DNA from: Laetmonice hystrix
Taxonomy: Eukaryota
DNA length: 64,000 nucleotides
Direction: 5' to 3'
NCBI GenBank assembly: GCA_965235115.1
Contig: OZ249436.1
Coordinates: 11,098,001-11,162,000 of the forward strand
Shown: positions 36,001-64,000 of the stretch, one piece after another
Layout: each line of letters opens with the position of its first letter
Numbering within the stretch: position 1 is the first letter of the stretch
Program-made: the position numbers and the translations under genes
Notes under the pieces: model-generated
Database searches by the model: none
The model's input: the letters and a program-made list of their open reading frames with translations, nothing else
What the model was told of the DNA's origin: nothing

Positions 36001-39000
36001 GTGTCTCCCGGAAAGGTCCGGGAGGAAATCCTTTGGGAGCTCCTTGTCCCCGGTGACCCATCACCCACCCGCGGGACAGTGTCCCACTAAGAGCACTGTG
36101 TCTACATAACGGAATATGACGCGGATCACTAATTGGTCATTAAGGCCGTGAATTGCACGGAGAACAATTGAGTCGTGATTGGTGGCGTTATCTACAGGGA
36201 GTCGTGACGGGTGGGCGGTGGGAGAGAGATGTGTGAAGCATGAGTGTAACTCCCACTGTTACAGCGACGGCTGCTGCCGCTACCACAGACAGCCTCCTGT
36301 TGATGCAGCCGGAGCACATGGACCACGAGACGGGCGTTATCCTATTGTGTTCTGGCTGGCAGGAGCACAGAATGCTTCTGTTTTACCCATCACTGTTGTA
36401 ACCACGTCAGCGCGCCGGTGATAAACTTTTTACAGTGTGGGGGTCGTATTGTCAATAGAAACTGTGGGTGAACCAAAGCACAGGGACTATTCTTGATTAG
36501 ACCGCGGATAGAGTAGAGCCATCAGGAGCCAGGGACGGATATCGGCTCAGACTGAATTTAAAACAAATTGAGCCTCGCCAGCTGAGATCTACCTATGTGA
36601 CCCAGGCCCACCTGGGAGGAACATCGGCGAATAAGGAGGGAAATGTGAGGGAAAGGGAAGACTTGCGACCGACTCTGAGAGGTAGATTGGCTGTCGGCGA
36701 CAGGCTCTTTACGACGGACAAGGTGTGAACAAGCACTGTATTTGTTGATCAGGATATATCTGTCTCACATGAACATGAACTCGGGCCAAAAATCGCCAGC
36801 TGCGTCTGTCTGGCCTGTGATGTCTCCTGCCTTGAACTATCTGTGATGACCCAAGTGGTGATTTTTTGAGGGCCAGCGTTGAGCTTTTTTCCGGGAGCTA
36901 GCTATCGGTTTCAAGCAGTGCGTCTGTTTTGAGTCTGCTACTGCCGTCAGAAATTGCTACACTTCATTTGTATCCGTTGGTGCTAATATTGGATGATGTT
37001 GGACCCGTCAGAACAGCCTTATCTCATGGATTATACAATGGGGCACCACTCTGGATTATCGGTGGCCCACATGGGGTATCCAGCGGCCCACGGTGGCCCA
37101 CCGTCCGGCTACTACCAAACTCTGGACCTCAGCATGCGTCCTCCGCCACTACCCCACACCAGTATGTTACCGCCTTCCAACACATTCTCACATGGTAACT
37201 ATTTTATCTTTTACATCCATGTCTACTGAAATAACACCAGCCAGCCGTCTGGTAACCCTCCCACAGTATGTCACCGACGTTAACAGTATAAGATATGTAC
37301 GTATATGTAGAAATATGGTTGGAGTGTATGGTGGAGGGGTAGATGTTGAGGAGGAGATGAGAATTAGGTCAGTGTGAGTGGAAGGTGATGACATGTAGAA
37401 CCGGGAGGGCTGGAGGGTGATGACTGCAAATTTCACTAACTCCGTGTCATTAGTCATTGGTGGGGGTGGGGGTGGGGGTGAGGCAGTGGGGGTTAAATGG
37501 TCACGATCAGTAAAACTCCAGCCTACTGCTGCAGCTGGACTCTATGAATCAAGGAGACATGTGGGTCTGCCCTCCCTCTCCCTCTCCCTCGCTGTCTCCT
37601 GTACCTGCCGTCGGAGTACCTCAGGACGTATGCCTGTCAGATAGCGTTAGGAATCATTTGTTTCTGAACAATGTGTTCCTTGTCCGGAGATTGGGGACAG
37701 AAAGACAAAATGAAAACTTATAGCAATCTATCCTGATGACCAAGTAGAGAGGCAGAGAAGTTGTGAAAAAAGATTGGTGTGAGTGTGTGTCCACGTGTAC
37801 GTCTGTGAACCGACAGGTGCACTGGCAACTTTACCTCGGGTGAACCTCTCTTCTTCTCCTCGACATCTAAAGTCTCTCCATGTATCAAACTTATTCCTGC
37901 TATATAAGTTATGATCATGAACATTATCGGTTATTGAAATAATGCAGGCCTGTCAAGTTGACTGATAGTACCGACTAGTCCGGAGGTCACTTACCGCTCC
38001 AAGGTCATTTGGATACACTTAACTGTGGTAGCTCTCATTCTAGTATTGCATACATTAACAGGAACGTGTAACGTGAATTATGATTAGACATTTTGTCATT
38101 GCACCCGGAAGTTACTCAGTCTTGGCCCTCCTTGGGGCCGAGTTGGCAGGTCAGGGTTAACTTTTCATAAGGTTCGGATCGGGTTGGCAGGGCGGGGTTT
38201 AGCATTAATCTGTCATTAGGTTCAGATCGGGTTGGCAGGGCAGTCCTTACCGTTGTTAACCTGTCATTAGGTTCAAGTCGAGTTGACAGGGCAGTCCTTA
38301 CCGTTGTTAACCTGTCATTAGGTTCAAGTCTAGTTGGCAGGGCAGTGCTTACCGTTAACCTATCATTAGGTTCAGATCGGGTTGGCAGGGCAGTGCTTAC
38401 CGTTGTTAACCTCTTATTACGTTCAAGTCGAGTTGACAGGGCAGTCCTTACCGTTGTTAACCTGTCATTAGGTTCAGGTCTAGTTGGCAGGGCAGTGCTT
38501 ACCGTTAACCTGTCATTAGGTTCAGATCGGGTTGGCAGGGTAGTGCTTACCGTTGTTAACCTGTCATTAGGTTCAGATCGGGTTGGCAGGGCAGTGCTTA
38601 CCGTTGTTAACCTGTCATTAGGTTCAGATCGGGTTGACAGGGCAGTGCTTACCGTTAACCTGTCATTAGGTTCAGATCGGGTTGGCAGGGCAGTGCTTAC
38701 CGTTGTTAACCTGTCATTAGGTTCAAGTCGAGTTGACAGGGCAGTGCTTACCCTTGTTAACCTGTCATTAGGTTCAGATCGGGTGGCAGGTCAGTGTTGA
38801 TTTAGGTTTATAAAATGTATGATCCTGATCAATTCACCACAGGATATAATTTAACTATACGTGTACACGAACGTGTTCACTCAATATCTGTTTAAGAGAT
38901 GTGTAATTAATTTAAAGGGGGTATATTAGCAAGGGCAGGTTTGAATTCGGGACCATTGCTATAATATTTTTGGACTGAATCACAGGTTTTGAAATAGTGT

Positions 39001-48000: not shown

Positions 48001-51000
48001 TCGTCTGTTAAAAAAATACTCTGGCCATGGATACTGAATGTAGTGACGTGTAGCAGGGACTAGCATCCTCAGCTACTATTGTCAAGTGAGTGAGTGGATA
48101 ATGGTGGTTTTATGCCGTGTCGGCATCTAAGGCCATCTTCACGGCGAAAACAGAGGTGGAATACTGAATAGTGAAATGGACCTCTTTTATTTTGGGCCCC
48201 AACGGCAGTTAACTACTGAAAAAAAACCACACAAAAGACCTCGTGGACTATTGTCAAGAGATCATGGAAATAAGTCAAGATAACTTACCCAGCGTTTATC
48301 ATTTAAAACGAAAACTTGGCTTATTATGATCTTATTGATTGATATAAGATGATTCGCATAATGATACTTGTACTGAAAAAAGATGTCCGTTTTTTAAGGA
48401 TGGAGGAATGGATAGGCTTTTCATATAATTGGGACATGAAAAGTTTGGACGAGTGCTGTCATCCGTAAATATCAGCTAGCCATAACAATGTCACCATCAA
48501 GGTAATCAACGACACTACATCAGGGAAGGTGGCACCTGGAGGGAAGTCTGCCGGTAATCATAGACACCACGACAAGGACAAAGCTGCTTTAATTACCGGC
48601 GCACATGCCAGCGGCTTCGTTAAGGCACCAGCATGCACTCTGCACACACAAACTCTGGTCTTTGTGAAGTACCCAGTTCTGACATTGATACTTTGTCACA
48701 TGCACCCTCAGCGCCTAATGAGAAGTCTAAACTGTAATCCAACACAATCCCACGTGGAAATACTTTGCCTAATGTCAACTCTCAACTCCTCCCAAACCAG
48801 AAAACGACCCTTGCGAGAAAAAGGGTGAAATAACAGAGAGCGTAACAAAAAGATGGAAATGGATTCCACATTGGTTGACGGGCGGGTGCTCTAGGTTCAG
48901 GATTCCACATTTGTTGACGGGCGGGTGCTCTAGGTTCAGGATTCCACATTGGTAGACAGGCGGGTGCTCTAGGTTCAGGATTCCACATTGGTGGACTGAC
49001 GGGTGTTCAAGGTTCAGGATTCCACATTGGTTGACGGGCGGGTGCTCTAGGTTCAGGATTCCACATTGGTAGACAGGCGGGTGCTCTAGGTTCAGGATTC
49101 CACATTGTTAGACAGGCGGGTGCTCTAGGTTCAGGATTCCACATTGTTAGACAGGCGGGTGCTCTAGGTTCAGGATTCCACATTGGTGGACTGACGGGTG
49201 TTCAAGGTTCAGGATTCCACATTGGTTGACGGGCGGGTGCTCTAGGTTCAGGATTCCACATTGGTAGACAGGCGGGTGCTCTAGGTTCAGGATTCCACAT
49301 TGTTAGACAGGCGGGTGCCCTAGGTTCAGGATTCCACTTTGGTTGACGGGCGGGTGCTCTAGGTTCAGGATTCCACATTGGTAGACAGGCGGGTGCCCTA
49401 GGTTCAGGATTCCACTTTGGTTGACGGGCGGGTGCTCTAGGTTCAGGATTCCACATTGGTAGACAGGCGGCTTGCCCTAGGTTCAGGATTCCACATTGGT
49501 GGACTGACGGGTGCTCTAGTTTCAGGATTCCACATTGGTGGACTGACGGGTGCTCTAGGTTCAGGATTCCACATTGGTTGACGGGCGGGTGCTCTAGGTT
49601 CAGGATTCCACATTGGTAGACAGGCGGCTTGCCCTAGGTTCAGGATTCCACATTGGTGGACTGACGGGTGCTCTAGTTTCAGGATTCCACATTGGTGGAC
49701 TGACGGGTGCTCTAGGTTCAGGATTCCACATTGGTTGACGGGCGGGTGCTCTAGGTTCAGCAGGTTTCTGTCAAGGGTACAAGGTTTGACTCTGTATCTG
49801 CTGTTGCTATGATGACTTTTCTGCAGGTAGCAGGATGCAAGACATGCAATGATGTTTAGATCAGACAATAACAGGATATCACTTATCAAACAACAACATT
49901 GTTGGTTTTCGATGTGAAAAGCTCAAAGGATGTTTGTGGAAACCTATGCACTACGAGTACCAGTCATAAATTTTACACCTTCCGACAATGACGATCCTTT
50001 ACGACGACGACCATATTTGACGACAGAGCACGTCGAGAGCAGTCTGGTCAACTCTCTTCTGACATTCTACAAGCCACCCCTCACCTTTCCCTAAGGTTAA
50101 TGTTCTAATACTCACAGAAATAGATATAAAAAGAGCAAAATAAAGGCCAGTACCATGCATTTATGAACTAAATAAATGGCCTATACAAATTGATATAGTA
50201 CTGTCTGTCTTTAATGTATTGAGACACGCGCAGGTATTCAAAAAACCTGGTTCAACCTATGCAGCTGCTTTGGAATAAATTTGGATGATACTTATTGTGT
50301 AGAGTATCATGAGTCAAACTCTACTGAGGTAAAAAAGGATCCAAATACATCAACTTTTGCAGAGATAACCTGTCCTGTCTACACAGAAGTATATCATATT
50401 ACAACGATCGCCCTCATTATGTGTAGATTTACTTCTAACAATAGCAAAACTGGATGAGCAAACGTGCCATTCTTTGCTTGGGCAGTGAAAAATGTGATCG
50501 CTTTTTTCACTCTGGCTTATTGACATTCCTGCCCGCAAGCACCGGTCCGACTCAACACCGAAACTGACCAAACCCAACCAAAACTGACCGACCTCATTGC
50601 CACCTGGACGTCGGTGACGTTTTGGTGTTTAGTGGCACCCCACAAGCACTACTGCCAAAACCGAAACAATGCACGGCCCCAAGTACCGAATTTCCATGTA
50701 CATGTACATGTATACGACAGGCTACGGGACGATATTCTACCAAACATGATTAGCGTCTGATCTGAGATGAATTTGCAAACATGCAGGTAGCTATATCGGA
50801 AATAGTTGAAAGTTTTCGAACATAAAATGTATTTGGTTCCCTTTAATGGTCCGGAAAAAACGTGCTAGGCCTTGATTGACTGCTGAAAGTAGAGATCAAC
50901 AATTGCGGGAGAGAAATCGAGACTTAACTACGGCTGCTCACAGTATAGCAGAAACCAATCATGACAGGCGGCAGACTTTGATCTCCGGCCAATCGGCCAC

Positions 51001-54000
51001 TACTCTTGCAGAGTCCAGTGGGGTTAAGTCTCCTATAAGATCCTTTGAGCTAGCCGTAATGAGAAGCAACAAAGGTCAAGGCTAAAGAGTTCATGTACAG
51101 TTTGCGATTTCCTGAGATGAGTGTCTGGTGTCAAAGATCAAAGGTAGCAGGTAGACTAAGCCCATCCCTGAGGTCCCTGTAATCCATGAATGCTGTGACC
51201 TGTGGTAGACCAAGCCCATCTCTGAGGTCCCTGTAATCCATGAATGCTGTGACCTGTGGTAGACCAAGCACATCTCTGAGGTCCCTGTAATCCATGAATG
51301 CTGTGACCTGTGGTAGACCAAGCACATCTCTGAGGTCCCTGTAATCCATGAATGCTGTGACCTGTGGTAGACTAAGCACATCTCTGAGGTCCCTGTAATC
51401 CATGAATGCTGTGACCTGTGGTAGACTACGCACATCTCTGAGGTCCCTGTAATCCATGAATGCTGTGACCTGTGGTAGACTAAGCACATTTCTGAGGTCC
51501 CTGTAATCCATGAATGCTGTGACCTGTGGTAGACTAAGCACATCTCTGAGGTCCCTGTAATCCATGAATGCTGTGACCTGTGGTAGACTACGCACATCTC
51601 TGAGGTCCCTGTAATCCATGAATGCTGTGACCTGTGGTAGACTACGCACATCTCTGAGGTCCCTGTAATCCATGAATGCTGTGACCTGTGGTAGACTAAG
51701 CACATCTCTGAGGTCCCTGTAATCCATGAATCCTGTGACCTGTGGTAGACTAAGCACATCTCTGAGGTCCCTGTAATCCATGAATCCTGTGACCTGTGGT
51801 AGACTAAGCACATCTCTGAGGTCCCTGTAATCCATGAATGCTGTGACCTGTGGTAGACTACGCACATCTCTGAGGTCCCTGTAATCCATGAATGCTGTGA
51901 CCTGTGGTAGACTAAGCACATCTCTGAGGTCCCTGTAATCCATGAATCCTGTGACCTGTGGTAGACTAAGCACATCTCTGAGGTCCCTGTAATCCATGAA
52001 TGCTGTGACCTGTGGTAGACTAAGCACATCTCTGAGGTCCCTGTAATCCATGAATGATGTGACCTGTCGGCCCTGCCCCCTGGCCAGACTTTCCTAGTCA
52101 GCCGTACTGTTCTGCAGGTGTTGATTCTTTTTGTTTCATCTTTCAGTTCTGATGATGAGGACACTCAAGGAGGCGGCTACGGTGGGGAAAGTGACCCTAA
52201 TGACAAGGAAAGGTTGGCAAGGTAAGATCTTCTCATAATACCGTATCTTATGTTTGACAACGGGGTATTGGGGTAATCCGCCAAAAGTGTTTTCTCAAAT
52301 GGTCTACCAAATAACCTTTTCTCCTTGCTGAAGTCTTGGTCACCCATCTTGCTTCGAGTACTAGTATTATTATCACACTGTCAATGTGAGATTTGAACGT
52401 CTGCCTCGCCATGAAGATAAAATTGACACTTACTAATGTGTGTGATAAAGGTTTACCGGTAGTCTTCGAATATTATATGGGAATGCTTTAAATGTAAAGG
52501 ATTGCAGTTTAGGATAAGGAGGTTATCTTTTTCTAACATTGCATTAAAATGGACTCAGTATTAAGAAAAAAAAATAGTTATTTCTGACTTGGAGTAAAAC
52601 AAGCTATTGGTTTTTAATGGAAATCTTTGTTTAGTAATGAGACCTAAAAACTAGGAGCACCTTGGTAAAGGTCACCAAAGAACAAACTCCGGTGACCTAC
52701 CAAAACAGAAATATTTCTGCCGGCAAAAAGGCCTGCAAACATGTGAAGTGAGAGTTGTTAGAAAGCCATTCACCAGCCAGAACACAATGGGTTGTTTAAA
52801 GTTATGGAAGCTGACACGGATCTGTTTACAAGGACATCCTTGTGCAGGGGTTTCCCCAGACTGTGCATTTCTCGAGATAAACCATGCATTATTGTTAACC
52901 TGTATTACCATATTGTGATAAGTATTGTACTTATGTGCTTTAAGACAATCCATGTATTTATGTTTAAGAAGAAAAGACTGAAAAATCAACAAAAGTAAAG
53001 AAATTCATCGGGGATTCTCAAAATAATGCATTCGCCCATGCAGTGATGCTTAACCGTTTTGAAGATATATGTTGGGTATAATATTTGGAACTATACTCAA
53101 TAAGGAATGACCTAATAAATCACTTCTGGGTGTAATGAAATTTGCACATTGATGGGTCGTTGTTAAGGTAGTGTCTACGAGTAAAGAGTAGCTCTTCAAC
53201 GTTACCCTGGATGTTTGCACATGTTTCCTGTTCCCCACCTTTGTAGTACATAACTCTGCTAGTTTTGCATCACAATGGCTATTGCCACCATGTCGACAGT
53301 CCCAAAAATTCAACTTGCGAGCATGCCTGAATTGTTGTAAGTTGCACTTGCAGTTGTTTTGTGGGTAACAGTGGTCTCTCTCTTTTGCTCTGAAGCACGA
53401 AGCTATACCAACAACATATTATGTACTGTTGATGTAACCCCCCAAAGTACAGTCATTACTGTCTGCAATAGAGGAAGGATGAAAAAATGGTAACAAAATG
53501 ATATTATTGAAATGTGTGCCGTATTGCAACTGAAAACGCCAGATATGCAGAGATTTGGGTGTCGGTGACAATGAGGGCAATTTATGAGAATTAGATGCTA
53601 CATGGCATTGTCTCCAGTTGTGTCCAAAGGCTGACAGGACTTCGATACAGTTGTCTATCTCCCATATCATCAAAAAGATGATGAAAACCCAACCTGCAGT
53701 TCTCAAATGTAAGGATGTACCGGAATTGTACAACACGTTTCATGTACGTCTTTGTACATGCATTCTGGTTGTTGTCACTTGCAGTATCTTCACTGCTCAC
53801 TACTCTGCGCATATAAATGCCGCAATCAGTAGAATTTTAGCTGGATGAATTTACAGGGAATAGCTGCCCTTACATGGTCGGTCCATATCTAAAACACATA
53901 CCAGCACTTTATTGTGATCTAAACATACCATTTCAAGAAGCTTAAAATTTGGAGCAGTCGTCAAGGCTGCACAACATACGTACCCCCGGTATCCTATCTC

Positions 54001-57000
54001 TACGCCCCTATAGGCTGGTTAACAAATGCTTAACCGTAACTTTGCCCTTTACATTTCATAAATCAAGACAATGGAAATTGTGAGTATGACTTCAGTACCT
54101 TCCTCTAGCAAGCTAAGGAAATGCCCTGTGAGGAACAAATTAAAACCGTTTAGAGAAAGCCTGTACATTAACCGGACAGCATGACATTCTTTCCGACCTG
54201 GGTTTCAGTTTTCAGACATCCTCGGCTCTTGTCAGTATTTTTAAGCAACACTGTCATTCATCCTGGAAAACCCCCCATTGCGATTCCTATTTTAGTTTGG
54301 TGACCTTCCAATCTTTCTTCATCAAGTAAAAGAGGCGAGGAATTTAAAAGGAAGAACTCAAGATAGCATGATTTCAATAATATCATTTTGTGATTATTTT
54401 TTTAACTCTGTCAGTTACCACTTGGTGTTCGGGTTTGTTCACCACGCTGGAAAAAAGTTCTTTTTTCTTTGTTCAAGTTTGGCTGAAGATTACTTTCTCA
54501 TGTATAATATACCTGTCTCTGGAACGAGTTCTATATTGACACGTAATTGTGATCGATATTCGCATATTTTGTAGACTGCTCTCGGGTGTGTGTCCTTGGT
54601 GTGTTGGATGTGTGTTTGTGTGCTTTTTATTATTTTTTAAGGTGGGGGTGCTTGAAACCTCGGTATCAGAAATTCTCAGTTTTTCTACTTAGGCTATGAC
54701 AGTCTTTGGTTTACTGAGAATAAGTAAATGGGTGTTTTTATTCTGTAATATTGAACCCTGGCGTCTTAATATTTACGTCGGAAACGGACAATGAATCTGA
54801 GATTATCAACCGAAGGTTTTAGTTGTTTCTGTGTAACATCCTTGATAAATGATACCTTAAATATGTTTTCCAAAAGCAGACCAAAAACAGAAAAAAAACC
54901 TGCCAGTCTGGTCTAAATGTTTTTGCGTGGTCACCATAGCATGTATGAACGGCTTGGTGGGGTCAATTATCTCTGTCTCTGCTCTCAACAACTAATGTTT
55001 CCTTCTGCCTGTGGACTGTGTGTTGTCGAGTTTTCCGAACTTTTTCACAACCCTGGTGACAAGGATTTAAAATGAGACGAACGGAAGAATTCCTGTCTTT
55101 AGCCAGAATTAGAAGAATCTGATTCAGAAGGTGTGTTTCTTAATGAAGGTCTGCACCATCAAATTCTAGGAACAAACTAAATGAAGAGTCTAACTTTTGT
55201 TTTTTTTAAGGGCTAGATGCCTTTACGTTTTTCGATAAGAAAGCCGTATTTGTAAAGCTTGGACCTTCAATGGAAAATCAGTCGTTTAAAAATAAGAAAC
55301 TATTAAATGGGTAGATTTTTAAAATTTTGTTACTTGATGCAGGAATCTTTCATCGACTCTACCAGGAAAATATGTAGGAAAATTCCATTTGGTAGTGGCA
55401 ATAAGTACATATAGGATAGATGAAGCTTCAGAATACTGGGTACTGGTACTAGAGTAAATGTTGTTCGTGTCATTATACCGACCATATACCAGGGCCGTTT
55501 ACAAAGTGAACCAGAACATTTTACCGTGCGTGGCTTGACTCTGAGTTAAATGTGATGCCGTGTCGTCCAAGTCACCCTCTAAGGTAAGATAGACAACTGG
55601 AATGTCATCTCCCCCAGTTGAAGATTGCTCACTGGAACCATCACGTTCACACCAAGCGGTCACACACTATCCTGACACCTGTCATCTTTACAATCACTAA
55701 ATCCTCAAATAAAACATTTCAAATCAAATCAATATTATTATAGGAAGGGTTTTAGTCTAAGATGTATGCACTAGTAAGGAGTCCAAACGGTTGCAGTGAG
55801 AAGAAACTGCAGCACTTGCAGGGACCCACTACTGGCACCTCTTATTGCAAATATGCCTTAGCAATGGTAGACCCCTCTCAGAGTGGTATAAGCCTCCCCT
55901 GACGAGCAGCCTTATCCCTGCTCGGGTGTGATGTGGGGACGGTAACGTCCCTACCATGCACCCCACTACCCACAGCGTCCTGGAGTGATGGACAGGTCCT
56001 GGAGGACGAACAGGAGGAGCCTCCCGCTCCGGGAGCCACAGTGGGGACCATGTCGCAAAGCCCGTTTATGTATACCTCTCTGACGGGCGTGCGTATCCAT
56101 GGCTAAGACAAATTAGCAAGAGGAGTTACCTGTAGTGAGACCTACAAACCTGGGCTCCTTGCCGGTGCATACACCTGTAGGCGACCTTCAATTTAATAAC
56201 TACAGTGATTTATCGTCACCGGTGACATGTTTTGACCAGTGATGGTGGTGATGAGCAGTTTCGGTTATATATGGACGGATGTTTTATGTGTTCTGTGTGA
56301 CCGACATGGTGATCATTCCCAGGAGTCGTCCCCCCCACCGGCCAGCTGGACGCTATAGGGGACGACCGGACGGTCATAGTGACCTGAAGGCTGTCTCCTC
56401 GTCCAGTGTCGCAGGTCTCTGTCGTGATTTGTCATTGCTGTTCACTATGACGTGTGTGTTTCCATTGTAGAGAGAGCCACTGTGAAATTGAGCGGCGCCG
56501 CCGCAATAAAATGACGGCGTACATAAACGAGCTTTGCGACATGGTCCCCACATGCTCAACTCTCGCCCGAAAACCCGACAAGCTCACTATCCTTCGTATG
56601 GCCGTTTCACATATGAAAAACATGAGAGGTAACGCCATACTGTTGTACTCTAGTGGCGCCATTTTGAACCTGGGTCCACTCTACCATATTACACCCCCTG
56701 CCATCCTGCTGCTTGTTTCCCCCCGTTCTCTTTCTTTCTTCCTTTTTTTTAATTTTTTATATTTTTTTTCTCCAGTGGGACATTTTTTCTAACCCTTGGA
56801 CAGCACTAGAGCCTCCATCGGTCAGTCACTGAGCCAGTAGCAGCCTTAAACGCATGATGCTAGCCGTCGCCTTTCGTTGCCAAGCCTGTTTGCCATTAGC
56901 CATTCAAATGGTCACCTGGTTGTAATGTCGGTGTGAGGATGGAAACAAACATGTTTCATTCAGTGCAGTGCCACTCTGTCAGAACTATGTAGAATTATGC

Positions 57001-60000
57001 TCTGTTATTTTCTCAGAAGTACATCAATAGCTTCCTGGAAACCAAAACGTCTATGTCGAGGTCATTTGGAATCTCCATTTCTTTGCCCAGACATTGCCTT
57101 GAATCTTGATCACAAATACAAACAAAACTGAATACGTTACTCTTCTGTCCTGTTGCCTTGGATGCATTTTGATCGTATTTTTCAAAAGACATGCCTTTTC
57201 TTCTTTTATATTTTTATATTTGACTCTAAAATGGATTCTTGGACGAAACACACGTCGATGTATCCCATATAAACCAGGTGGCCATTTAAGATGGAGGCCA
57301 TTAATTTCGGTGCATCTAATACCTTCTCTCCTGCAGCGGTCTGTTCCACTTTGTATCATCAGTGAAACCACTACCCTCATGGCCCCGTCCTTCCTCCCAC
57401 AAACTATCGCGACCACACGTCTCGGGAGACGAGAGCGAGAGAGAGAGAGAGAGCAGGAGTACCGACCCAGTTGCTGACGCAGTTCTGCGACCTGTTTTCC
57501 TCTTGTAGGGAGAGCCATTGTGAGATTGAAAGGCGTAGACGTAGCAAGATGGCCACTTATGTTAATGAGTTGTGTGACATGGTCCCAGCATGTAGCACGC
57601 TCGCTCGAAAACCAGATAAACTCACGATTCTTCGTCTGGCCAACGCCCATATGAAAGTACTTCAAGGTAATGTAATACGATGTAACGTAACCATGTTTTG
57701 ACTGAATGATCATCGTCATTGATTGCCGCACCGTGTGCCGTCGCAACACGTGATTGGCTGTTTGGTGTTTGGCTCCAGAGCCTCACTTTCAGCTACTGTG
57801 GTTATGACTCTTTCAACTGACTGTCCACGTTGCACCGTCACTGTCTTGACTCTCGCTCTACAAAACTATGGGCAGTGTGCTCAAGAGTTGCCAACGCTTC
57901 CATGCCCACCTGCTTCCACAATATCCGCATTTTACATATTCATTTCTTTATTGAAAGAAAATAAAGTTTGCTTTCCTAGAAAGATGGACCCAGTCAGTTG
58001 GCAGCTCTATGAACTTTCTCAGCTCTCTGCACAGTTCCAACAGCTATTGGGTGCACGCACTCTGGTCTCTGCCCCCTCCCACTCCACCCGAACTCTCAAT
58101 GTGTTTGTGTCACAACACAGTCTTCAAAACACTACTGCCAGCAACTTTACCGAATCCCAGGACGGAAAATTTGCAGTGCCATGTTGGCAGTGGAGAGCCC
58201 TCAAAGGTTTAAAAAGGTCACTGTGCCTCCTATATGCTTTACGTCCCCTGAAGGATTGCCGCCATGCAACGCAAGCTACAATGTATATGTACTATTGATA
58301 GCATAACATTTACGTCGATTCTAAAATATGTATGTCAGATGGAAAAATATAGAGCTCAAAAATAATATAGATGTTTTCCACAAAACAGTTGAGTGCCCAG
58401 CAGTTTAAATAAAGACCGATGAATTGGTTGAAGTCTGAACCCCAACTTTAAAACAGATTTTCAGAGGCCGAAATTGGTTCAGTAAAGTACAATAGGCAGG
58501 TGAATGTATTGATAAGAGAGTATTTCATTGAATCCTTTCCAAGAGGCAGAGTTATAATGCTGTAGCATGTAGATGACTGGTCGGTTGACCGTATCCCCGT
58601 TTAGAAATGTCGTTGTAACTGGATGATGGTGAGAACATATTGTAACCGAAGGACATTCGTGTGAGATTCGTACACCAGGTTAACCTATCAGAAGTTCTCG
58701 CCAATTCTCACGAAATAATATTCAAATGAAGTGCAGATTTCCAAAGCTCATGATCCTCGTAAAGTACAGGGGGCGGGGAATTATGTGGTCACGAAGTTAT
58801 TATATTAAACTAATTAGTGTTGGTCGTAAAATATTTTATGTGATTTTGATCAGCGAGTAGAAGACAATGCTGAGCTATGACTCATCACTTGGGAATGGCT
58901 GAGGGGAGTGATCCTGGTTTCTGATGGTATACGCTATCCTGAGGATAATTTTTATCTTATGTCTCTAGCACATCCTATGGAGGTTGTTTCAGTGTTCATA
59001 TATACTCTCGAACCTTTCTAAATCAGTATAGAAGAAGATAAACCTTGCAATACCTGGGACATCGTGCTTAGTCAACGCTGACATAAAAACAACTCATTAG
59101 GAATTCTGAAGAAATATTAAAGAAACAGTTGGGAAAGCCGTGACGAGTTTTTTTTTAGGAATTATCATCCTGAGTACGGAACCCATAAATGTATTCCTGT
59201 TTGATGTAATGTTTATTTATGTACTTCCCAACTTATTGATATTTGGTCCATCCCCGAGTTTGTAAGAACAGGAAGGACAACGAGATGTAGCAATAATTTA
59301 TGATGCGTCCGTTTTATATGCTGGAATACAGACATGACAGTGGAAGTTACAGGAGAGTTTGAAAAGTAAATATGTCAACCCTTGACCTACCAATGTAAAT
59401 TAGAAACCAGTTTCGTTCTGGCTTCATATTCTGATGTGAATTGGCTCGAGAACTTGACCTTGTTCAGTGTTCTATACTGCTGGGAAAATGAGCTTGGGAG
59501 ATATTTTAGCGAGTGCCAGACATTGTGTAAGATTTGCGAGGGCGTTGTTTCGGAGTTGTGACCATCCGTAATGCTGTCTGTATGAGAAGTGGTGTTGACA
59601 GACCGAGGAGGAACGAATGACGGAATGACAAAGATTCAACACTAACACGTCCCCAGTGAACCTGACCTCCTCAATCCCCGCGTCCGCCATAGCTTTAGTC
59701 GTCCTGTAGTAGACCTCCACTGGTAGCGGTTCCTACTAAACTAGTTGTCGTCGCTTGCCGTCGGCTCCTGCAGCTTGCCACGGTTCCCAGTTGTCGCACC
59801 CAGTAGCAGCACGGCGCTCACCAATGTCTTCACATATCATTGTTACGTAGATATTTCTTTCAGTGTCCGTCCTTGATTTGTTTCCAGGTCATTTGGATGT
59901 TGATGATGCATTGCTGCACCCTGTAAAGGCAGTAGTAGACCGTCTTCCCTGGATCTCCTCTATTTTTTTCCTGCTGTTGCCATTCTGCTTTGTCAGTACT

Positions 60001-63000
60001 TGTAGTTTGTGGGGACTTTCTGGGTGCATTGAATTAACACCTGCCTCGATTTCACTGCCATTGACGCCAGAATAAACAAACATTAACGTGGTGTAAGGAG
60101 ATCCGTCTATACTCCACTGGGACAGGGTTGAACCAAGGATGCTGTTCCATCCCTACCCTCCCTCCCCCACCATCCACAGTATCCCGTTTCTATGAAAAGG
60201 TTCCATTGATGATACAGAATGCAACAAGCACGGTGCCAAAATGTAACGTTACTTCCAAATGACGCGGTTTACCATTCTATGTCTTAACTTCTGTGCATGC
60301 ATTTTGTTTGGTTTCTGATTCACAGCCTGTTTTAATCCAGAATCTGGAACTTTTTCACATCCTACATTTTTATCATCTCCCCCCCCCCTTCTTTTCGCAA
60401 GAATAAGGCATGCATCCATAGTTGTGATTTTACCGCGTCAATCATTTTCGAAAAATTGCCAAACTATATATTTTTTAAGCTTTTTCCCCCTATCTTTTCA
60501 ACATTTGAACGGAAGTGTTTGTCTTAACATGGAAAAAAGGTTTTGTCGCCAACTGTGAAGGAGATAAGCTCTTCTTATCACTTAAATCTTAGTCAGCTAT
60601 TACTTATTTTTACTAAAAAGAATTAATTTTGTTCCACATCGAAATGCGCCGCTTTTAAGTTTTGTATCATTGTCTAGCAAAACTGGAAAGTATGCTGGAA
60701 AGCAACAAAGCGAAACTAAAGATTCTTTTGAAAGATTCTTTTTTTTACCGATTTCTGAAATCAAAACTGTTAAACTCAGCGTCCGATTGTTGAAAAACAA
60801 AAGAGTCTCAGCAAACAATTCCATTTCTGTTGTTTCTGATTAATTCTGAAGATTGAAATCTCTACCTGTTCCATGGTGAAACTAATATAGATTGAGAATC
60901 AGAACCGTCTTTGTGTGAGGGGAAGAAAAGAAAAAGTTGACAAATCATCCACATCACCGCAACTGTATCACGGCTTATTGTGTTTGATAGCCCTGGAAGC
61001 ATGTTATATTGTCCTGGCGATGGCTATTTGGATGGAGCAACTTGAAGCCGTGTTACCATAACGTGTGTCTTTGTTTGCTAATTGCCCCCATTGGATACTT
61101 AGGAACAGGAAACACCAGTACAGATGGTTCATACAAGCCTTCCTTCCTCACTGATCAAGAGCTAAAACACCTCATATTAGAGGTAAGTGCGTCAAAGTTT
61201 GAGGGGAGATATCGAACATGTCAGATGACACTGATTAATTCTATTATTGTTGACACTTTTGTTTTAAACTTCACATCAGAATAAAGCCGCGCATACACTT
61301 TGTTAAATGAAGTTATTCTGAAGACAAAACAAATCTTTAAACATACCAGACAGGTGCAAAAATTGGGCGACTTTTACTTTGAGAACAGGAATGTTGTTTT
61401 TTGAGTAGTCTGTTCCGTTGAGTTACCCATACTCGCCTGGCTTCTTGTAAAATATCAAATGTGACTTCCTTTCAAATAAATAATTGAGCTATATTTTCAG
61501 CCTATGCGTTTTCATTGCCGTTTATATATACTTTACAAAAGTATCTGTAGGATAGTGACAAGTGGCTAGGTGAAGCTAAGGTGGCTTTTAGAACCTTTTA
61601 GGTAAAATAAAAAATCCGTTGGACCAGAATGTTACAAGTGGAGAAATTCATGAGCGAGACTTGTCGAGTGGATGGTGTGCGTCCATATGAAGTACGCACA
61701 CAGGTATCGAGTAATGACAAGATCAGGGTAACACGATCTGAATGCACTGCTCACCGCCAGATGGCAGCACCGGTATTACTCAAACGTCCAGCGGTCTATG
61801 GCATGGGCACCGTAACTCTTGCTTGGCGAGGATTTAAAGAAATAAATTTGAAAACAAAAGAAAAGATTTTTCATACATTTGGCACCCAAATCCTACAAAA
61901 CCAGTTGGCATTATGAAGAGTCAATTAGGTGCCGTATTTTATATTGAGAACTTTAGTACATGTATTTGGTGAACCTGACGATCAGCTTAATGCTGTCTGA
62001 GATTAAACCCATGGGGGAAGGGGTCACAGTGTGTGACACCCAGTGGGTCCCAATGATTGACAGATGTTGTGACCGGTTGCACCTATTTTTGTTTGCAGGC
62101 TGCGGACGGTTTCCTGTTCGTAATCCAGTGTGACACTGGGCGTGTTATTTATGTGTCGGACTCGGTAACACCAGTCCTCAACCAGACACAGGTGGGTAAT
62201 ACAATCAGAGAAACTTCTCAGACGGCTTTATATCTTCGTATGTACAGCAAACAAAGAATGATAACCAATGCTATCTTATTTATTAATTAATATGACAGGA
62301 AATGTGTGAATATTGGAGGGCAAGGTGCTCAGTGACGTGAATGTTGCCTTTTCTCACTGATTAATTACTGATTAATGTGAGGTGTATAGGTTTGGATGAA
62401 AAAGATATTGATCTTTGAGAATTGTTATAGTCATCCTCAGACCTGCATCAGACAGATCCATACGTAACGTGTACAGACAGACATCTAAGAAAAGGACTTT
62501 GAAGGTCAACGTGTGTCGTTTAACTGTTGAGAAACTTGTTTTTCAGTCTGACTGGTTTGGCAACAGCCTTTATGAGCTAGTCCATCCGGATGATATAGAG
62601 AAATTGAGAGAACAGCTCTCTACCTCTGAGTCCCAGAACACGGGTCGGATCCTCGATCTGAAGAGTGAGTGGTCAACCCGTCGGCAACCTGAGCCGAGTA
62701 AAACGGGTTTACAACTATACCTATCTTATTTAAAGTTGTCCACATAGTGATATTTTGTATTCATTGCTTCTCTATGGGAGGGATATGATTTTGATGTTGT
62801 TCTCGTACTGTGTTGTACAAAAACGGGAGGGACGTCCCACTACATGTCAAGAACGATGAACGCACCAAAATTCCACTTGGGGTCGGGGGGAATTAAACAC
62901 TTCCCGTTGTTTGTGAAGATTTGAGCGTGTAAATTGGAATTATATTATTGATTTTTCTCATGCGTTTTTTTTTACCGAGTCAATTTGTTTTGTTGTTGTA

Positions 63001-63863
63001 AAGGTCTATGCTATCTCGGATGGACCACTGTTCATCATTACATAATGAAGTCAACAGCATTCCTAACTGTTTATAAAGATATTTGGTAAATTATGGCGAA
63101 TTTGAGACCTGAGTTCCATAAGTCACGCATGTCTGATTGACTGCTTCAGTAATAGCTTAGAAAATACACCGTAGGCCATCAGGTAGTGGTATGTGATAAT
63201 TTTTATATGATCTGTTTTTCAGCTGGGACAGTAAAAAAGGAGGGTCATCAATGTAAGTATAATGGCTTTTTACATTTGTTCATCTAAATAATAGATACAC
63301 TTCTACACATAGGTAACTGTTTCTAGATTACATCTGTATACAGAAAGACTTGGCCCAACTATCTGACATTGACATAGAAGTATACCGCGACAGTAGTACT
63401 AGTGATATCATATTAGTTAGCTGTCGTTATCAGATTATAGGGGACCAAGATTCAGAATTAGTTTTCCTCGATCTAATGTTTCTTAAAGCGCCTCTTGCTA
63501 TTTCTGTACAATTAATTCCCTTGATACATAATGCTGTCCTTCACCTTTTTTTGATTTTTTTTTTATAAGAATAAGTTTTTTAGTCTTTACACCTCTTCTA
63601 ATGGTCGTTTTAATTTGGCGGTTGCCTCGCCACCCATATTAATGTGGTACGTTGTGTATTACCTACAGCATCCATGCGGTTGTGTATGGGCTCAAGGCGT
63701 GGTTTCATTTGTCGTATGAAGATTGGTAACATGCCAGTCGACCCAATGACTCCAAGCCACACAGTCCGTATCCGAACCCGTAACACGCTGGGGCCGTCCT
63801 CGGACGGGCAGCAGTATGCTGTCGTACATGTCACTGGCTACATCAAGAACTGGCCGCCTTCTG
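15011..63863 (+). CDS. ARNT: ARNT / HIF-1beta (bHLH-PAS) gene, 5' part; spliced CDS join(15011-15053 [or alternative first exons],42782-42839,52147-52221,56471-56628 OR 57509-57666,61103-61182,62099-62191,62547-62664,63223-63252,63669-63863...), 3' incomplete
   Basis: Manual splicing gives one open frame: [236 protein letters not shown]...[15 protein letters not shown]. This matches the ARNT bHLH and PAS-A sequence as I recall it. All introns are GT-AG with matching phases. Confidence 0.97.
25740..25875 (+). repeat. Dispersed repeat, copy 1 (related to 46243-46396)
   Basis: Shares cacgtcaaatagattt(g/t)tgatatcattca and colinear upstream similarity (atgaa-ctttac...gggatgg-ct-gagg) with the copy at 46.3 kb; probably a non-autonomous element, family not determinable. 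Confidence 0.65.
28228..29241. repeat. Minisatellite, 35-bp unit x about 29 (gacgatggtcggagagggccatactgccgtccgta)
   Basis: Direct reading; explains the three overlapping 359-364 aa minus-strand ORFs with a 35-aa period. Confidence 0.98.
30723..30866. repeat. Tandem repeat, 48-bp unit x 3 (caggttttactgtgctttcccggataggtgtaagctggaattaccgtt)
   Basis: Units start at 30723, 30771 and 30819. Confidence 0.96.
33480..34380 (+). mobile_element. Decayed LINE reverse-transcriptase fragment
   Basis: Frameshifted peptides such as VTLHGL..LRLLG, SNHRW...[18 protein letters not shown] and FRPIED are colinear with LINE RT domain order as I recall it; many stops. Confidence 0.33.
34850..35627. promoter_or_regulatory. 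CpG/GC-rich promoter-like region with a pure polypurine tract (34939-34997) upstream of candidate exon 1b
   Basis: High CpG density against the AT-rich intron background; about 59 nt of only A and G; CCT-rich tract just before the ATG at 35628. Confidence 0.4.
35628..35703 (+). CDS. ARNT: ARNT candidate alternative first exon 1b ([25 protein letters not shown], phase 1)
   Basis: atcATGA context after a CpG/GC-rich, promoter-like stretch (about 34850-35620); 76 nt ending G|GTACTT; phase 1 fits exon 2. The donor is weak and there is no homology support. Confidence 0.4.
36993..37194 (+). CDS. ARNT: ARNT candidate alternative first exon 1c ([14 protein letters not shown]...PPSNTFSH, 67 aa His/Pro/Tyr/Gly-rich, phase 1)
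   Basis: In-frame TAA 9 nt upstream of the ATG; 202 nt of protein-like sequence ending G|GTAACT (similar to the GTAACG and GTAATG donors of the bHLH exons); phase 1 fits exon 2. Confidence 0.55.
38171..38796. repeat. Minisatellite, 51/48-bp unit x about 12-13 (ttaccgttgttaacctgtcattaggttcagatcgggttggcagggcagtgc)
   Basis: Direct reading; 48-bp variants lack one gtt; each unit carries an AACCT-N6-AGGTT hairpin; explains the 151-aa ORF. Confidence 0.97.
42782..42839 (+). CDS. ARNT: ARNT exon 2 ([18 protein letters not shown]; basic NLS-like KGRKRK)
   Basis: Very strong acceptor (ttttcttttctctctttttag) and donor GA|GTGAGT; 58 nt, phase 1 to 2, bridging the first exons to exon 3; basic cluster where ARNT has its N-terminal NLS. 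Confidence 0.82.
44570..44766. repeat. Tandem repeat, 31-bp unit x about 6 (cccccgcacactatacgactcgagtcataag)
   Basis: Direct reading; the unit contains the palindrome GACTCGAGTC. Confidence 0.96.
45620..45880 (+). mobile_element. Decayed RTE-like LINE fragment
   Basis: THGACLL...SDQC...[10 protein letters not shown]...NDNCKHEEL resembles the RTE post-RT consensus (VYxACVLSxLLYGxETW...AFxxRCLRxI..W.DxVxNEEV) as I recall it. Confidence 0.35.
46243..46396 (+). repeat. Dispersed repeat, copy 2 (related to 25740-25875)
   Basis: See copy 1; begins tttttagcccccaaccgaagggg and contains ccgtccgt motifs. Confidence 0.65.
48861..49759. repeat. Minisatellite, 39-bp unit x about 23 (ggattccacattggttgacgggcgggtgctctaggttca)
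   Basis: Direct reading; explains the [13 protein letters not shown] ORFs. Confidence 0.98.
51151..52067. repeat. Minisatellite, 54-bp unit x 17 (gtagactaagcacatctctgaggtccctgtaatccatgaatgctgtgacctgtg)
   Basis: Direct reading; explains the 357-aa and 306-aa minus-strand ORFs with an 18-aa period. Confidence 0.98.
52147..52221 (+). CDS. ARNT: ARNT exon 3 ([25 protein letters not shown])
   Basis: Acceptor tttcatctttcag and donor AG|GTAAGA; 75 nt, phase 2 to 2; SDDE...DKERLAR matches the segment just before the ARNT basic region. Confidence 0.92.
56041..56072 (+). promoter_or_regulatory. Intronic element complementary to bHLH exon 4a (putative splicing or editing RNA duplex arm)
   Basis: Its reverse complement tacataaacgGgctttgcgacatggtccccac matches exon 4a 56520-56551 tacataaacgAgctttgcgacatggtccccac at 31/32 positions. 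The match is certain; the function is inferred. Confidence 0.7.
56471..56628 (+). CDS. ARNT: ARNT bHLH exon 4a ([52 protein letters not shown])
   Basis: Acceptor tttccattgtag and donor G|GTAACG; 158 nt, phase 2 to 1; canonical ARNT-type bHLH. Confidence 0.96.
57509..57666 (+). CDS. ARNT: ARNT duplicated bHLH exon 4b ([52 protein letters not shown]), putative mutually exclusive alternative
   Basis: Acceptor ctgttttcctcttgtag, branch-like gctgac at about 57473, donor G|GTAATG; same length (158 nt) and phases as 4a; intact frame; many synonymous differences. Confidence 0.88.
59700..60070 (-). mobile_element. Decayed RTE-clade LINE fragment (end of RT)
   Basis: VNGSEIEA-V...[25 protein letters not shown]...TWKQIK...[16 protein letters not shown] resembles the RTE consensus (NGxEIExVxxFxYLGS..GxSxxEI..RI..AxxAF..IWK...YxTLVxxVLLYGxETW) with frameshifts. 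Confidence 0.5.
61103..61182 (+). CDS. ARNT: ARNT exon 5 ([27 protein letters not shown])
   Basis: ttag acceptor and GAG|GTAAGT donor; 80 nt, phase 1 to 0; essentially identical to the ARNT bHLH-PAS linker. Confidence 0.97.
62099..62191 (+). CDS. ARNT: ARNT exon 6 ([31 protein letters not shown]), PAS-A start
   Basis: tttttgtttgcag acceptor and CAG|GTGGGT donor; 93 nt, phase 0 to 0. Confidence 0.97.
62547..62664 (+). CDS. ARNT: ARNT exon 7 ([39 protein letters not shown]), PAS-A
   Basis: cttgtttttcag acceptor and A|GTGAGT donor; 118 nt, phase 0 to 1; contains the PAS HPDD motif. Confidence 0.97.
63223..63252 (+). CDS. ARNT: ARNT exon 8, 30-nt micro-exon ([10 protein letters not shown])
   Basis: tctgtttttcag acceptor and T|GTAAGT donor; phase 1 to 1; matches ARNT TGTVKKEG. 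Confidence 0.94.
63669..63863 (+). CDS. ARNT: ARNT exon 9 ([18 protein letters not shown]...[14 protein letters not shown]), end of PAS-A
   Basis: cctacag acceptor and G|GTATGA donor; 195 nt, phase 1 to 1; matches ARNT MGSRRxFICRM and VVHxTGYIKxWPP. Confidence 0.96.
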
Positions 63864-64000
63864 GTATGAGTGAGTTTGATTTTATCATTACCAAATGTAA
63901 CAAGAAAGTCAGCATTTCGCACTTGGATTGACAGTTCACTTCTAAAAATGACCTCAGGCAAAAGAAAGACGAAAGAACAGTTACACTCTAACTTTTTATA

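What the first reader, a model, noticed from the sequence alone, without database searches (positions are those of the whole stretch)
56471..57666. Tandemly duplicated, mutually exclusive bHLH exons in ARNT/HIF-1beta
Seen: two intact 158-nt exons, both phase 2 to 1 with their own splice signals, 880 nt apart, each encoding a complete ARNT bHLH (41/52 aa identical, heavy synonymous divergence). Joining 4a+4b shifts frame and hits TGA at 57652-57654. Skipping both shifts frame and hits a TGA in exon 5. Only exactly one of the two gives protein. Established: ARNT is the shared partner of HIF-alpha, AHR, SIM and Trachealess/NPAS proteins, and mutually exclusive bHLH exons are the known mechanism in TCF3 (E12/E47). 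Inference: this gene makes two ARNTs with different DNA-binding/dimerisation modules on the same PAS body, a potential switch across hypoxia, xenobiotic and developmental pathways. I do not know of this being described for ARNT but cannot check the literature.
Basis: partly seen in the sequence, partly recalled or inferred. Interest (0 to 1): 0.92.

Follow-up and report, generated by a model that had tools for sequence, protein, structure and literature searches.

The report
Alternative bHLH exon pair in ARNT
This annelid worm's only ARNT/HIF-1beta gene carries two interchangeable, equally well preserved exons for its DNA-binding and dimerising helix-loop-helix; the pair is shared with other annelids and a brachiopod, so it is an old, apparently undescribed way to make two versions of a hub transcription factor.

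Summary
Exons 56471-56628 (4a) and 57509-57666 (4b) are both 158 nt, AG/GT-flanked and in the same phase. They are 41/52 aa and 109/158 nt identical. Joining both gives TGA at 57652-57654, and skipping both gives TGA at 61152-61154.

It is not an artefact. An independent contig spans both exons, and a sister species has the same layout.

It is old and selected:
- The same A-then-B tandem pair is present in Owenia, Lingula and two further worm-like metagenome contigs.
- B-type exons form one clade inside spiralian ARNT (support 89/82).
- dN/dS is about 0.03 for 4b.

Both forms are used in other species. Lingula RefSeq isoforms X1/X3 carry A and X2/X4 carry B. Four full-length or partial environmental mRNAs carry B alone. 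Dimorphilus and other compact genomes kept only B, while a bivalve has only A.

Use of 4b in this species is not shown. No RNA run exists, and a relative's RNA-like run shows only 3-4a-5 spliced.

Two extras were found. A 32-nt intronic element pairs 31/32 with exon 4a, where that RNA reads AAA as GGG, which may be A-to-I editing. There is also a 12-nt microexon in front of the basic region.

Six paper searches found no description of this pair.

The parts
52147..52221 (+). ARNT exon 3 (..[24 protein letters not shown], ends in phase 2); the 3' splice site at 52146/52147 is provisional
   Evidence: The sister species' spliced contig runs from this exon's sequence (..DPNDKERLA) into 4a (loose end at 56469).
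54068..54079 (+). Alternative 12-nt microexon (AG/GT-flanked). It inserts QWKL between ..LAR and [11 protein letters not shown], directly in front of the basic region, and is compatible with both 4a and 4b.
   Evidence: exact match in intron 3 to the 12 letters that precede exon 4a in a second contig of run X8 (loose end at 56471).
56041..56072 (+). Intronic element reverse-complementary to exon 4a (31/32; the one mismatch is an A:C opposite 56530). It is a candidate editing-site complementary sequence and/or splice-choice structure.
   Evidence: pair I1; the stem is in the MFE and centroid folds, z = -7.2; the only significant minus-strand match of either exon, E = 1.3e-10; score 59 against a shuffle maximum of 27; single copy in the genome.
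56471..56628 (+). Exon 4a, the A-type bHLH (..[30 protein letters not shown]). This is the canonical type found in all bilaterian ARNTs compared.
   Evidence: Spliced 56628>61103 in the sister species' RNA-like contig.
56520..56551 (+). Exonic arm of the 32-bp duplex (codes [12 protein letters not shown]). Positions 56525-56527 read GGG instead of AAA in the spliced contig of run X8, but AAA in the DNA-like contig of the same sample.
57509..57666 (+). Exon 4b, the B-type bHLH (..[30 protein letters not shown]). It belongs to a spiralian B clade.
   Evidence: dN/dS is about 0.03 against L024 and L041. Only synonymous differences to organisms C and D are listed.
57652..57654 (+). TGA reached if 4a and 4b are both included
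61103..61183 (+). Exon 5 (linker to [30 protein letters not shown]). The TGA at 61152-61154 is reached if both bHLH exons are skipped.
62084..63871 (+). Further ARNT exons inside the window (PAS-A; approximate blocks 62084-62194, 62544-62666, 63668-63871). The gene runs on beyond the window.
   Evidence: tblastn

Best explanation
The window holds the single ARNT (HIF-1beta/tango) gene of an annelid.

Origin. Its bHLH exon was duplicated in tandem in a spiralian ancestor, before annelids and brachiopods split. Both copies have been kept as alternative exons ever since.

How exclusivity works. Each exon is 158 nt, which is not a multiple of three. An mRNA with both or with neither runs into a premature TGA and should be removed by nonsense-mediated decay. 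Only mRNAs with exactly one copy encode protein.

Products. The result is two ARNT proteins with the same PAS-A, PAS-B and C-terminus but different bHLH modules. They differ at 11 of 52 residues. Six of those differences are diagnostic of the B clade: N>S/T/G/C just after the last DNA-contacting Arg, T>A and I>V in helix 1, T>A in the loop, and M>L and R>Q in helix 2.

Likely consequence. The H, E and R residues that read the DNA half-site are unchanged. The two forms most likely differ in dimer stability or in preference among class I partners (HIF-alpha, AHR, SIM, TRH/NPAS), not in half-site recognition.

Shown: the exon anatomy, the frame logic, the conservation and purifying selection, and the use of each form in other species. 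Inferred: use of 4b in this species, enforcement by NMD, and the functional difference.

Possible regulator. A 32-bp duplex between intron 3 and exon 4a may affect the choice of exon, may be an ADAR substrate, or both. This is a lead only.
For: Anatomy and frames:
-.

Single gene, not an artefact:
-.

The same A-then-B tandem pair, with the same length (+3 nt in Owenia B) and phase, with AG acceptors throughout and GT donors on reading Owenia B as 161 nt:
- Lingula L011, exons 6603-6758 and 7262-7417.
- Owenia L013, exons 29782-29937 and 30430-30585.
- Metagenome contigs L024 and L041.
- Sister species D.

Phylogeny:
- B-type exons form one clade (UFboot 89 / SH-aLRT 82).
- That clade sits inside a spiralian ARNT clade (100/98).

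Selection:
- Window B versus L024 and L041 B: 24 synonymous and 7 non-synonymous changes by the Nei-Gojobori count, omega about 0.03.
- L024 B versus L041 B: 11 synonymous, 0 non-synonymous.
- A exons are similar, at omega about 0.02.
- The two listed differences between 4b and organisms C and D (57563, 57599) are third-position and synonymous.
- The flanking intron carries 17 mismatches plus indels in 219 nt. Fisher p is about 0.004 if only those two differences lie in the exon.

Use of both forms in other species:
- Lingula XP_013385136 (X1) and X3 carry A. XP_013385137 (X2) and X4 carry B on identical flanks.
- Spliced B-only mRNAs: L009/L037 (722 aa), L010, L040 (full length), P0159 and P0160.
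- B is the sole bHLH exon in Dimorphilus L012, in L020 and in many gutless-worm-type contigs. B is therefore a working ARNT bHLH.

Identity:
- The best solved-structure match of 4b is ARNT itself, E = 2e-19.
Against: There is no direct RNA evidence for 4b in this species. No RNA run holds the locus.

In the RNA-like run X8 of sister species D, the abundant spliced contig (depth 62.8) is 3-4a-5-6. Exon 4b appears only in a low-depth contig that continues into both flanking introns. In that sample, 4b is at best a minor form.

The window's 4b has two lineage-specific changes (V>N and A/T>V in helix 2), one of them at a usually hydrophobic helix-2 position. No non-synonymous difference to species C or D is listed, though the difference table is truncated.

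The difference table is truncated (53 rows not shown). The k-mer share of 0.36 fits 2-3 substitutions in the exon, so one unlisted change is possible.

NMD and any partner preference are untested. The Lingula isoforms are automatic models whose RNA support I could not inspect.
Confidence: 0.8

Rival explanations
1. Exon 4b is kept mainly as a regulatory 'poison' exon. Co-inclusion with 4a (56628>57509) creates a premature stop and tunes ARNT dosage through nonsense-mediated decay. On this reading it is not a coding alternative in this lineage.
For: Double inclusion does give TGA at 57652-57654. In the sister species' RNA-like run, only 4a is seen in the mature contig.
Against: A poison exon needs no protein-level conservation. 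Yet 4b keeps an open ARNT frame with omega of about 0.03 and 49-50/52 identity to B exons of Lingula, Dimorphilus and L024. B-only mRNAs and B-only genes exist in other species. No 56628>57509 joint was seen.
Confidence: 0.08
2. Exon 4b is an unused relic in this species. The pair was functional in ancestors, but here only 4a is spliced, and 4b is intact only because too little time has passed.
For: There is no RNA evidence for 4b here. The window's 4b has an unusual Asn at a core helix-2 position.
Against: Between this species and organisms C and D, the introns beside 4b have diverged by about 8% plus indels. The exon shows only two listed, synonymous changes. Against L024 and L041, synonymous sites are near saturation (pS 0.70) while pN is 0.057. 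The splice signals are intact.
Confidence: 0.07
3. The duplication is an assembly or haplotype artefact.
For: None was found. Tandem near-duplicates are a classic artefact class, which is why I checked.
Against: The copies are only 69% identical at the DNA level. A contig built from run X6 (organism B; possibly the sample the window was assembled from) spans both at even depth, and a sister species' contig holds both. Four other taxa have the same layout.
Confidence: 0.01

Closest known systems
TCF3/E2A E12 and E47
   Same: Tandem duplicated exons each encode a complete bHLH. One is chosen per mRNA, on a common protein body. The gene product is a shared dimerisation partner for many tissue-specific bHLH factors.
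   Different: It is a different bHLH class (no PAS domains), a different lineage (vertebrates against spiralians) and an independent duplication. E12 and E47 are known to differ in homodimer DNA binding. For ARNT-A and ARNT-B, nothing functional is known.
Vertebrate ARNT and ARNT2 paralogues
   Same: Two versions of the common class II bHLH-PAS partner, with slightly different bHLH sequences and overlapping partner sets.
   Different: In vertebrates the two versions are whole genes with separate promoters, and they differ along their whole length. Here only the 52-residue bHLH differs and the PAS body is shared. The B clade arose inside Spiralia and is not orthologous to ARNT2.
Human ARNT alternative exon 5 (isoform 1 versus isoform 3; PMC8944900 was listed; details are from my own knowledge)
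   Same: An optional short exon sits immediately N-terminal to the basic region. The 12-nt microexon at 54068-54079 occupies the same position.
   Different: The human exon is a 15-residue cassette, not a duplicated alternative bHLH. Homology of the two inserts was not tested.
RNA-structure-guided mutually exclusive splicing (docking and selector sites of insect Dscam1, 14-3-3zeta, MRP1) and exon-intron ECS duplexes of ADAR targets such as GluA2 Q/R (own knowledge)
   Same: A long, nearly perfect duplex forms between an intron and one alternative exon, enclosing that exon's 3' splice site. There is an A:C mismatch inside it and clustered A-to-G differences in RNA.
   Different: Only 4a has a strong partner; the same element pairs just 18/23 with 4b. 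There is thus no clear set of competing selectors. The element is absent from Owenia, L024, L041, L018 and Pinctada. Lingula instead has a weaker duplex on its B exon. Editing rests on contigs of a sister species only.
Other old tandem alternative exon pairs noted by this scan in the same genome (NRF1, AP-2, EB1; notes s1-327597, s1-333031, s1-319911)
   Same: Tandem, frame-exclusive exon pairs in the DNA-binding or functional domain of single-copy genes, shared with annelids and brachiopods.
   Different: They are different genes, and those notes are unchecked AI notes that I did not test.

Membership tests
ARNT (class II bHLH-PAS partner) | bHLH with the ARNT-type basic region (H..E...R in ..HCEIERRRR..) followed by PAS-A, PAS-B and a C-terminal region | tested here: met
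   (exons for bHLH, PAS-A, PAS-B and the C-terminus are collinear with Lingula and Owenia ARNT). (best PDB matches are ARNT chains, E = 2e-19, ahead of BMAL1 at 1e-14).
ARNT (class II bHLH-PAS partner) | Orthology to ARNT rather than BMAL/cycle | tested here: met
   both exons sit inside the ARNT clade (100/97), apart from the BMAL-like outgroups; a separate, 58%-identical bHLH exon on contig C11 is the likely BMAL/cycle gene.
Mutually exclusive exons from tandem exon duplication | Adjacent homologous exons of the same length and phase, each with its own splice signals | tested here: met
   158 nt each, phase 2 to 1, TAG|exon|GTAA for both.
Mutually exclusive exons from tandem exon duplication | Including both or neither destroys the reading frame | tested here: met
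   TGA at 57652-57654 when both are included, and TGA at 61152-61154 when neither is.
Mutually exclusive exons from tandem exon duplication | Both copies are under purifying selection and conserved across species | tested here: met
   (omega about 0.02-0.03; the tandem pair is present in Lingula, Owenia, L024, L041 and species D).
Mutually exclusive exons from tandem exon duplication | Transcripts contain one or the other exon, never both | tested here: inconclusive
   Met in orthologues: Lingula X1/X3 against X2/X4, and B-only mRNAs L009, L010 and L040. For this clade, only 3-4a-5 was seen, in contigs of one RNA-like run. No RNA run of the species itself exists.
ADAR editing site with an editing-site complementary sequence | Exon-intron duplex of about 20 bp or more around the edited adenosines | tested here: met
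   32 bp, 31/32 paired, present in the MFE and centroid folds, far beyond the shuffles.
ADAR editing site with an editing-site complementary sequence | A-to-G differences in RNA but not in DNA of the same individual | tested here: inconclusive
   56525-56527 read GGG in the spliced contig of X8 and AAA in the DNA-like contig of X9, which is the same sample. These are contigs of a sister species, the kind of both runs is not on record, and an allele cannot be excluded.
Docking/selector RNA pairing that enforces exclusive exon choice | One docking element with a competing complementary selector at each alternative exon | tested here: not met
   strong pairing only with 4a. Pairing with 4b is 18/23 and not beyond the shuffles (30 of 500 reach it). 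No such element is found in Owenia, L024 or L041.

The most novel reading that the evidence does not exclude
ARNT, the common partner of all class I bHLH-PAS sensors, has carried a second, exchangeable bHLH module in annelids and brachiopods for more than 500 million years. The choice between modules would be steered by an exon-intron RNA duplex. That duplex would also be an ADAR substrate, recoding helix 1 of the A module (I>M, N>G). One gene would then give three or more dimerisation surfaces that route ARNT to different partners (HIF-alpha, AHR, SIM, TRH). Lineages that lost one exon (molluscs kept A; Dimorphilus and gutless oligochaetes kept B) would be natural knock-outs of the switch.
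Probability: 0.15. Interest if true: 0.85.

Novelty: new member of a known kind. Interest (0 to 1): 0.64.

Why it matters
ARNT is the obligatory partner through which the hypoxia (HIF), xenobiotic (AHR) and several developmental (SIM, TRH/NPAS) pathways act. How one partner is shared out between competing pathways is an open question.

Vertebrates have two ARNT genes. This finding shows that a large part of Spiralia reached a comparable duality within one gene, by swapping only the 52-residue bHLH, and kept it under strong selection since before annelids and brachiopods diverged.

That isolates the bHLH as the selected variable. It also offers natural experiments: lineages with A only, B only, or both. 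Testable predictions can be run in laboratory annelids such as Owenia, and in Platynereis or Capitella if they carry the pair (I did not check those two).

The possible RNA duplex and editing site inside the A exon would add a second layer, if confirmed.

It also matters for annotation. Most single-product annelid gene sets, such as the Owenia one, list only the A form.

Tried and rejected
RNA evidence:
- Two run searches found no RNA run of the species. The holders X4-X6 carry the intron as well, so they are DNA.
- Read laying worked on contigs only. It can show presence, not absence or levels.

Sequence look-ups that failed:
- No gene on record for the Lineus and Crassostrea isoforms.
- No DNA available for the P0003 contig.

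Regulatory elements:
- A search for splicing-factor motifs (Rbfox, PTB, Nova, MBNL, CELF) around the pair gave nothing telling.
- A whole-length duplexfold scan (the first attempt, timed out) was too unspecific. I replaced it with local complement alignment against shuffles.
- The 4a-type intronic complement is absent in Owenia, Pinctada, L018, L024 and L041. It is not a conserved part of the switch.
- A docking/selector model was rejected for lack of a selector at 4b.

Contact residues and literature:
- Looking for ARNT contact residues in PMC5111884 and PMC12774657 gave nothing usable. The statement that H, E and R read the DNA rests on my own knowledge.
- Six literature searches (one search was malformed) found no description of alternative bHLH exons in ARNT.

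Not attempted:
- I did not send a complex-prediction job, because no binding claim rests on it.


Full report
**1. Observation**

Positions 56471-56628 and 57509-57666 are each 158 nt. Each follows a pyrimidine-rich stretch ending in TAG and is followed by GTAA.

Only frame 1 is open in each. It gives [52 protein letters not shown] for 4a and [52 protein letters not shown] for 4b. That is 41/52 aa and 109/158 nt identical.

Exon 3 ends at 52221 in phase 2. The first base of either exon completes an Arg codon. Exon 5 starts at 61103 with the ARNT linker [26 protein letters not shown].

A script that joins the exons shows four outcomes:
- 3+4a+5 is open.
- 3+4b+5 is open.
- 3+4a+4b stops at TGA 57652-57654.
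- 3+5 stops at TGA 61152-61154.

**2. A real locus in an intact single-copy gene**

The window is G000:C1:11098001-11162000 of a 627-Mb assembly. A six-frame search of the whole genome with the 4b peptide finds only these two exons (100% and 82%). The next hit is a 58% match on another contig, probably BMAL/cycle.

Collinear matches to Lingula and Owenia ARNT continue through PAS-A, PAS-B and the C-terminus. They end about 5.9 kb past the window.

Contigs built from the reads of run X6 (organism B, which may be the sample the window was assembled from) include a 2,926-nt piece covering 55386-58311 at even depth. A 4,067-nt DNA-like contig of a sister species (organism D, run X9) aligns over 55845-58068 with both exons in order. 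An assembly or haplotype artefact is excluded.

**3. What the two exons are**

An exhaustive search of 1.84 billion cluster representatives with the 4b peptide returned proteins 90-98% identical to 4b. These share a distinctive signature that I call B-type: S/T/G/C after RRRR, KMATYV, VPACS, RLAVAHMK.LQ. The canonical A-type signature is [22 protein letters not shown].

A region-restricted search with a full-length B-type protein classified about 110 named ARNT proteins:
- Molluscs, flatworms, nemerteans, arthropods and vertebrates are all A-type.
- The named B-type proteins are Dimorphilus gyrociliatus, Lingula anatina isoform X2 and Intoshia linei.

**4. The tandem pair is old**

The genomic loci show the following:
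- Lingula has an A exon (L011 6603-6758) followed about 500 nt later by a B exon (7262-7417).
- Owenia fusiformis, an early-branching annelid, has A (L013 29782-29937) followed by B (30430-30585). Its annotation lists only the A product.
- Two further metagenome contigs, L024 and L041, carry A then B about 0.7-0.8 kb apart. These came from a degenerate-pattern scan that returned 45 B-type loci.
- All have AG acceptors and the same phase, and GT donors. The Owenia B exon is 3 nt longer; its GT donor depends on that reading.
- The bivalve Pinctada has only A within its 20-kb gene.
- Dimorphilus has only B, fused to exon 3.
- An unnamed compact genome (L020) has only B.
- Many contigs that look like gutless-oligochaete host DNA have B with no A in the 4-8 kb upstream.

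A maximum-likelihood tree of 43 bHLH segments puts all 18 B rows on one side of a branch (89/82). That branch lies inside a spiralian ARNT clade (100/98), which excludes arthropod and vertebrate ARNT. With only 52 columns the support is moderate, but the test found no conflict.

The simplest history is one duplication in a spiralian ancestor of annelids and brachiopods, followed by losses of A or B in some lineages. Whether molluscs lost B or branched off before the duplication cannot be decided here. Notes from other sessions of this scan call this genome an annelid or polychaete. My comparisons fit that, but I did not establish it independently.

**5. Selection**

Between the window and L024/L041, whose exons are about 80% identical in DNA:
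- B exons have 24 synonymous and 7 non-synonymous changes by the Nei-Gojobori count (omega about 0.03).
- A exons have 25-28 synonymous and 5 non-synonymous changes (omega about 0.02).
- L024 versus L041 shows 11 synonymous and 0 non-synonymous changes in B, and 21 and 0 in A.

Across phyla, synonymous sites are saturated while B exons stay 46-50/52 identical.

Against the close relatives C and D, the only listed differences inside 4b are 57563 T>A and 57599 G>T. Both are third-position and synonymous. The 219 flanking intronic bases of the same contig carry 17 mismatches and several indels. If only those two differences lie in the exon, Fisher p is 0.004.

One caveat applies. That table is truncated, and the k-mer share of 0.36 fits two to three substitutions.

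**6. Are both forms used?**

In Lingula, the RefSeq models X1 and X3 carry the A exon and X2 and X4 carry the B exon. Their flanks are identical.

Spliced mRNAs with only a B exon occur in environmental transcript assemblies:
- L009/L037, 722 aa, found in two samples.
- L010, with exon 3, a 15-nt microexon, B, exon 5 and onward.
- L040, full length.
- The unnamed full-length proteins P0159 and P0160 also carry only B.

For the window's own clade the evidence is one-sided. Run X8 of species D holds a 1,854-nt contig of depth 62.8. It joins 56626/8 to 61101/3 (GT..AG) and continues into exon 3 and exon 6 sequence, so it is a mature 3-4a-5-6 mRNA. Exon 4b lies only in a depth-5 contig that runs into both flanking introns.

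So 4a is the main form in that sample. Use of 4b in this species remains an inference from selection and from orthologues.

**7. Mechanism**

Exclusivity needs no special device. The exons are 158 nt, so double inclusion or double skipping shifts the frame into an early TGA. Such mRNAs should be degraded, which I infer from the general rule for nonsense-mediated decay.

The H, E and R of the basic region are identical in A and B. In mammalian ARNT these contact the half-site (my own knowledge; I could not confirm it in the papers opened).

The differences fall in four places:
- Right after the last Arg.
- On helix 1 (T>A, A>T, I>V).
- In the loop (T>A).
- On helix 2 (M>L, S>A, and the C-terminal R>Q).

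I therefore expect a difference in dimerisation or partner preference rather than in DNA specificity, and I hold this loosely. B is the only bHLH exon in several lineages, so it can carry the essential ARNT functions on its own.

**8. Unexpected extra: an exon-intron duplex on 4a**

Positions 56041-56072 in intron 3 are the reverse complement of 56520-56551 in exon 4a (31/32). The single mismatch is an A:C opposite 56530.
- It is the only significant antisense match of either exon in the region (E = 1e-10).
- It is present in the MFE and centroid folds (z = -7.2).
- It is far beyond the shuffles (score 59 against a maximum of 27).
- It is single-copy in the genome.
- It lies in a block that aligns with species D.

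The stem encloses the 3' splice site of 4a in a 447-nt loop.

Inside the exonic arm, the spliced X8 contig reads GGG at 56525-56527. The DNA-like X9 contig of the same sample reads AAA there. X8 has exactly three more A>G differences than X9 overall. That is the pattern expected of A-to-I editing, which would recode I>M and N>G in helix 1. However, it rests on contigs of a sister species whose library type is not on record, so an allele is not excluded.

In Lingula, the B exon pairs with the A-B intron instead: 7285-7313 with 7031-7061, score 38 against a shuffle maximum of 28. Owenia, Pinctada, L018, L024 and L041 have nothing comparable. Such duplexes are therefore lineage-specific additions, not part of the conserved switch.

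**9. Known or new?**

Mutually exclusive bHLH exons are a known kind; TCF3 E12/E47 is the classic example. Automatic RefSeq models of Lingula already list both ARNT forms. Six full-text searches found no paper describing alternative bHLH exons in ARNT of any animal.

I file it as a new member of a known kind. It is of above-average interest because of the gene involved, the age of the pair and the natural A-only and B-only lineages. Other sessions of this scan noted similar old exon pairs in NRF1, AP-2 and EB1 of the same genome, which suggests a wider spiralian pattern. I did not test those notes.

Noticed in passing
window 56041-56072 with 56520-56551: A 32-bp, 31/32 exon-intron RNA duplex on exon 4a with one A:C mismatch. 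A sister species' spliced contig reads AAA>GGG at 56525-56527 inside it, while the DNA-like contig of the same sample reads AAA. This may be A-to-I recoding (I>M, N>G) and/or a splice-choice structure.
   Followed up: partly
window 54068-54079: A 12-nt AG/GT-flanked microexon (inserts QWKL just before the basic region) is seen joined to exon 4a in run X8. Analogous 4-5-residue inserts occur at the same spot in other worms' mRNAs (NVQGL in L010, RAAM in P0160 and P0280). It recalls human ARNT alternative exon 5.
   Followed up: partly
L011 7285-7313 with 7031-7061, and 7318-7336 with 6948-6966: In Lingula, the B exon (not the A exon) has significant complementarity to the intron upstream of it (score 38 against a shuffle maximum of 28).
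   Followed up: partly
L012, L020, L025, L049 and many others of L021-L065: B-only ARNT genes. In Dimorphilus the B exon is fused to exon 3. An unnamed compact genome also has only B. Many contigs that look like gutless-oligochaete host DNA have no A exon in the 4-8 kb upstream. Unnamed A-type (P0163, P0212) and B-type (P0008, P0160) mRNAs share features (RAAM microexon, GP after the bHLH) but differ in their flanks. Clitellates may therefore carry A and B in separate genes.
   Followed up: no
L019 501-2453: The annotated Tubulanus polymorphus ARNT is a single uninterrupted 650-codon ORF (A-type), so it looks like an intronless, retrogene-like copy.
   Followed up: no
L010 about 539-541: The spliced B-type environmental transcript has TAA where every other B exon has a Lys codon (AHM*ALQ). 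This may be an assembly error or a nonsense allele.
   Followed up: partly
L024 and L041 exons: Synonymous divergence between these two relatives is lower in B (pS 0.32) than in A (pS 0.58). This could reflect extra RNA-level constraint on the alternative exon, but the numbers are small.
   Followed up: no
window 28080-29317, 38345-38800, 48780-49890, 51090-52165: Long minisatellite-like tandem repeats give spurious long ORFs. The last two lie in ARNT introns upstream of exon 3.
   Followed up: no
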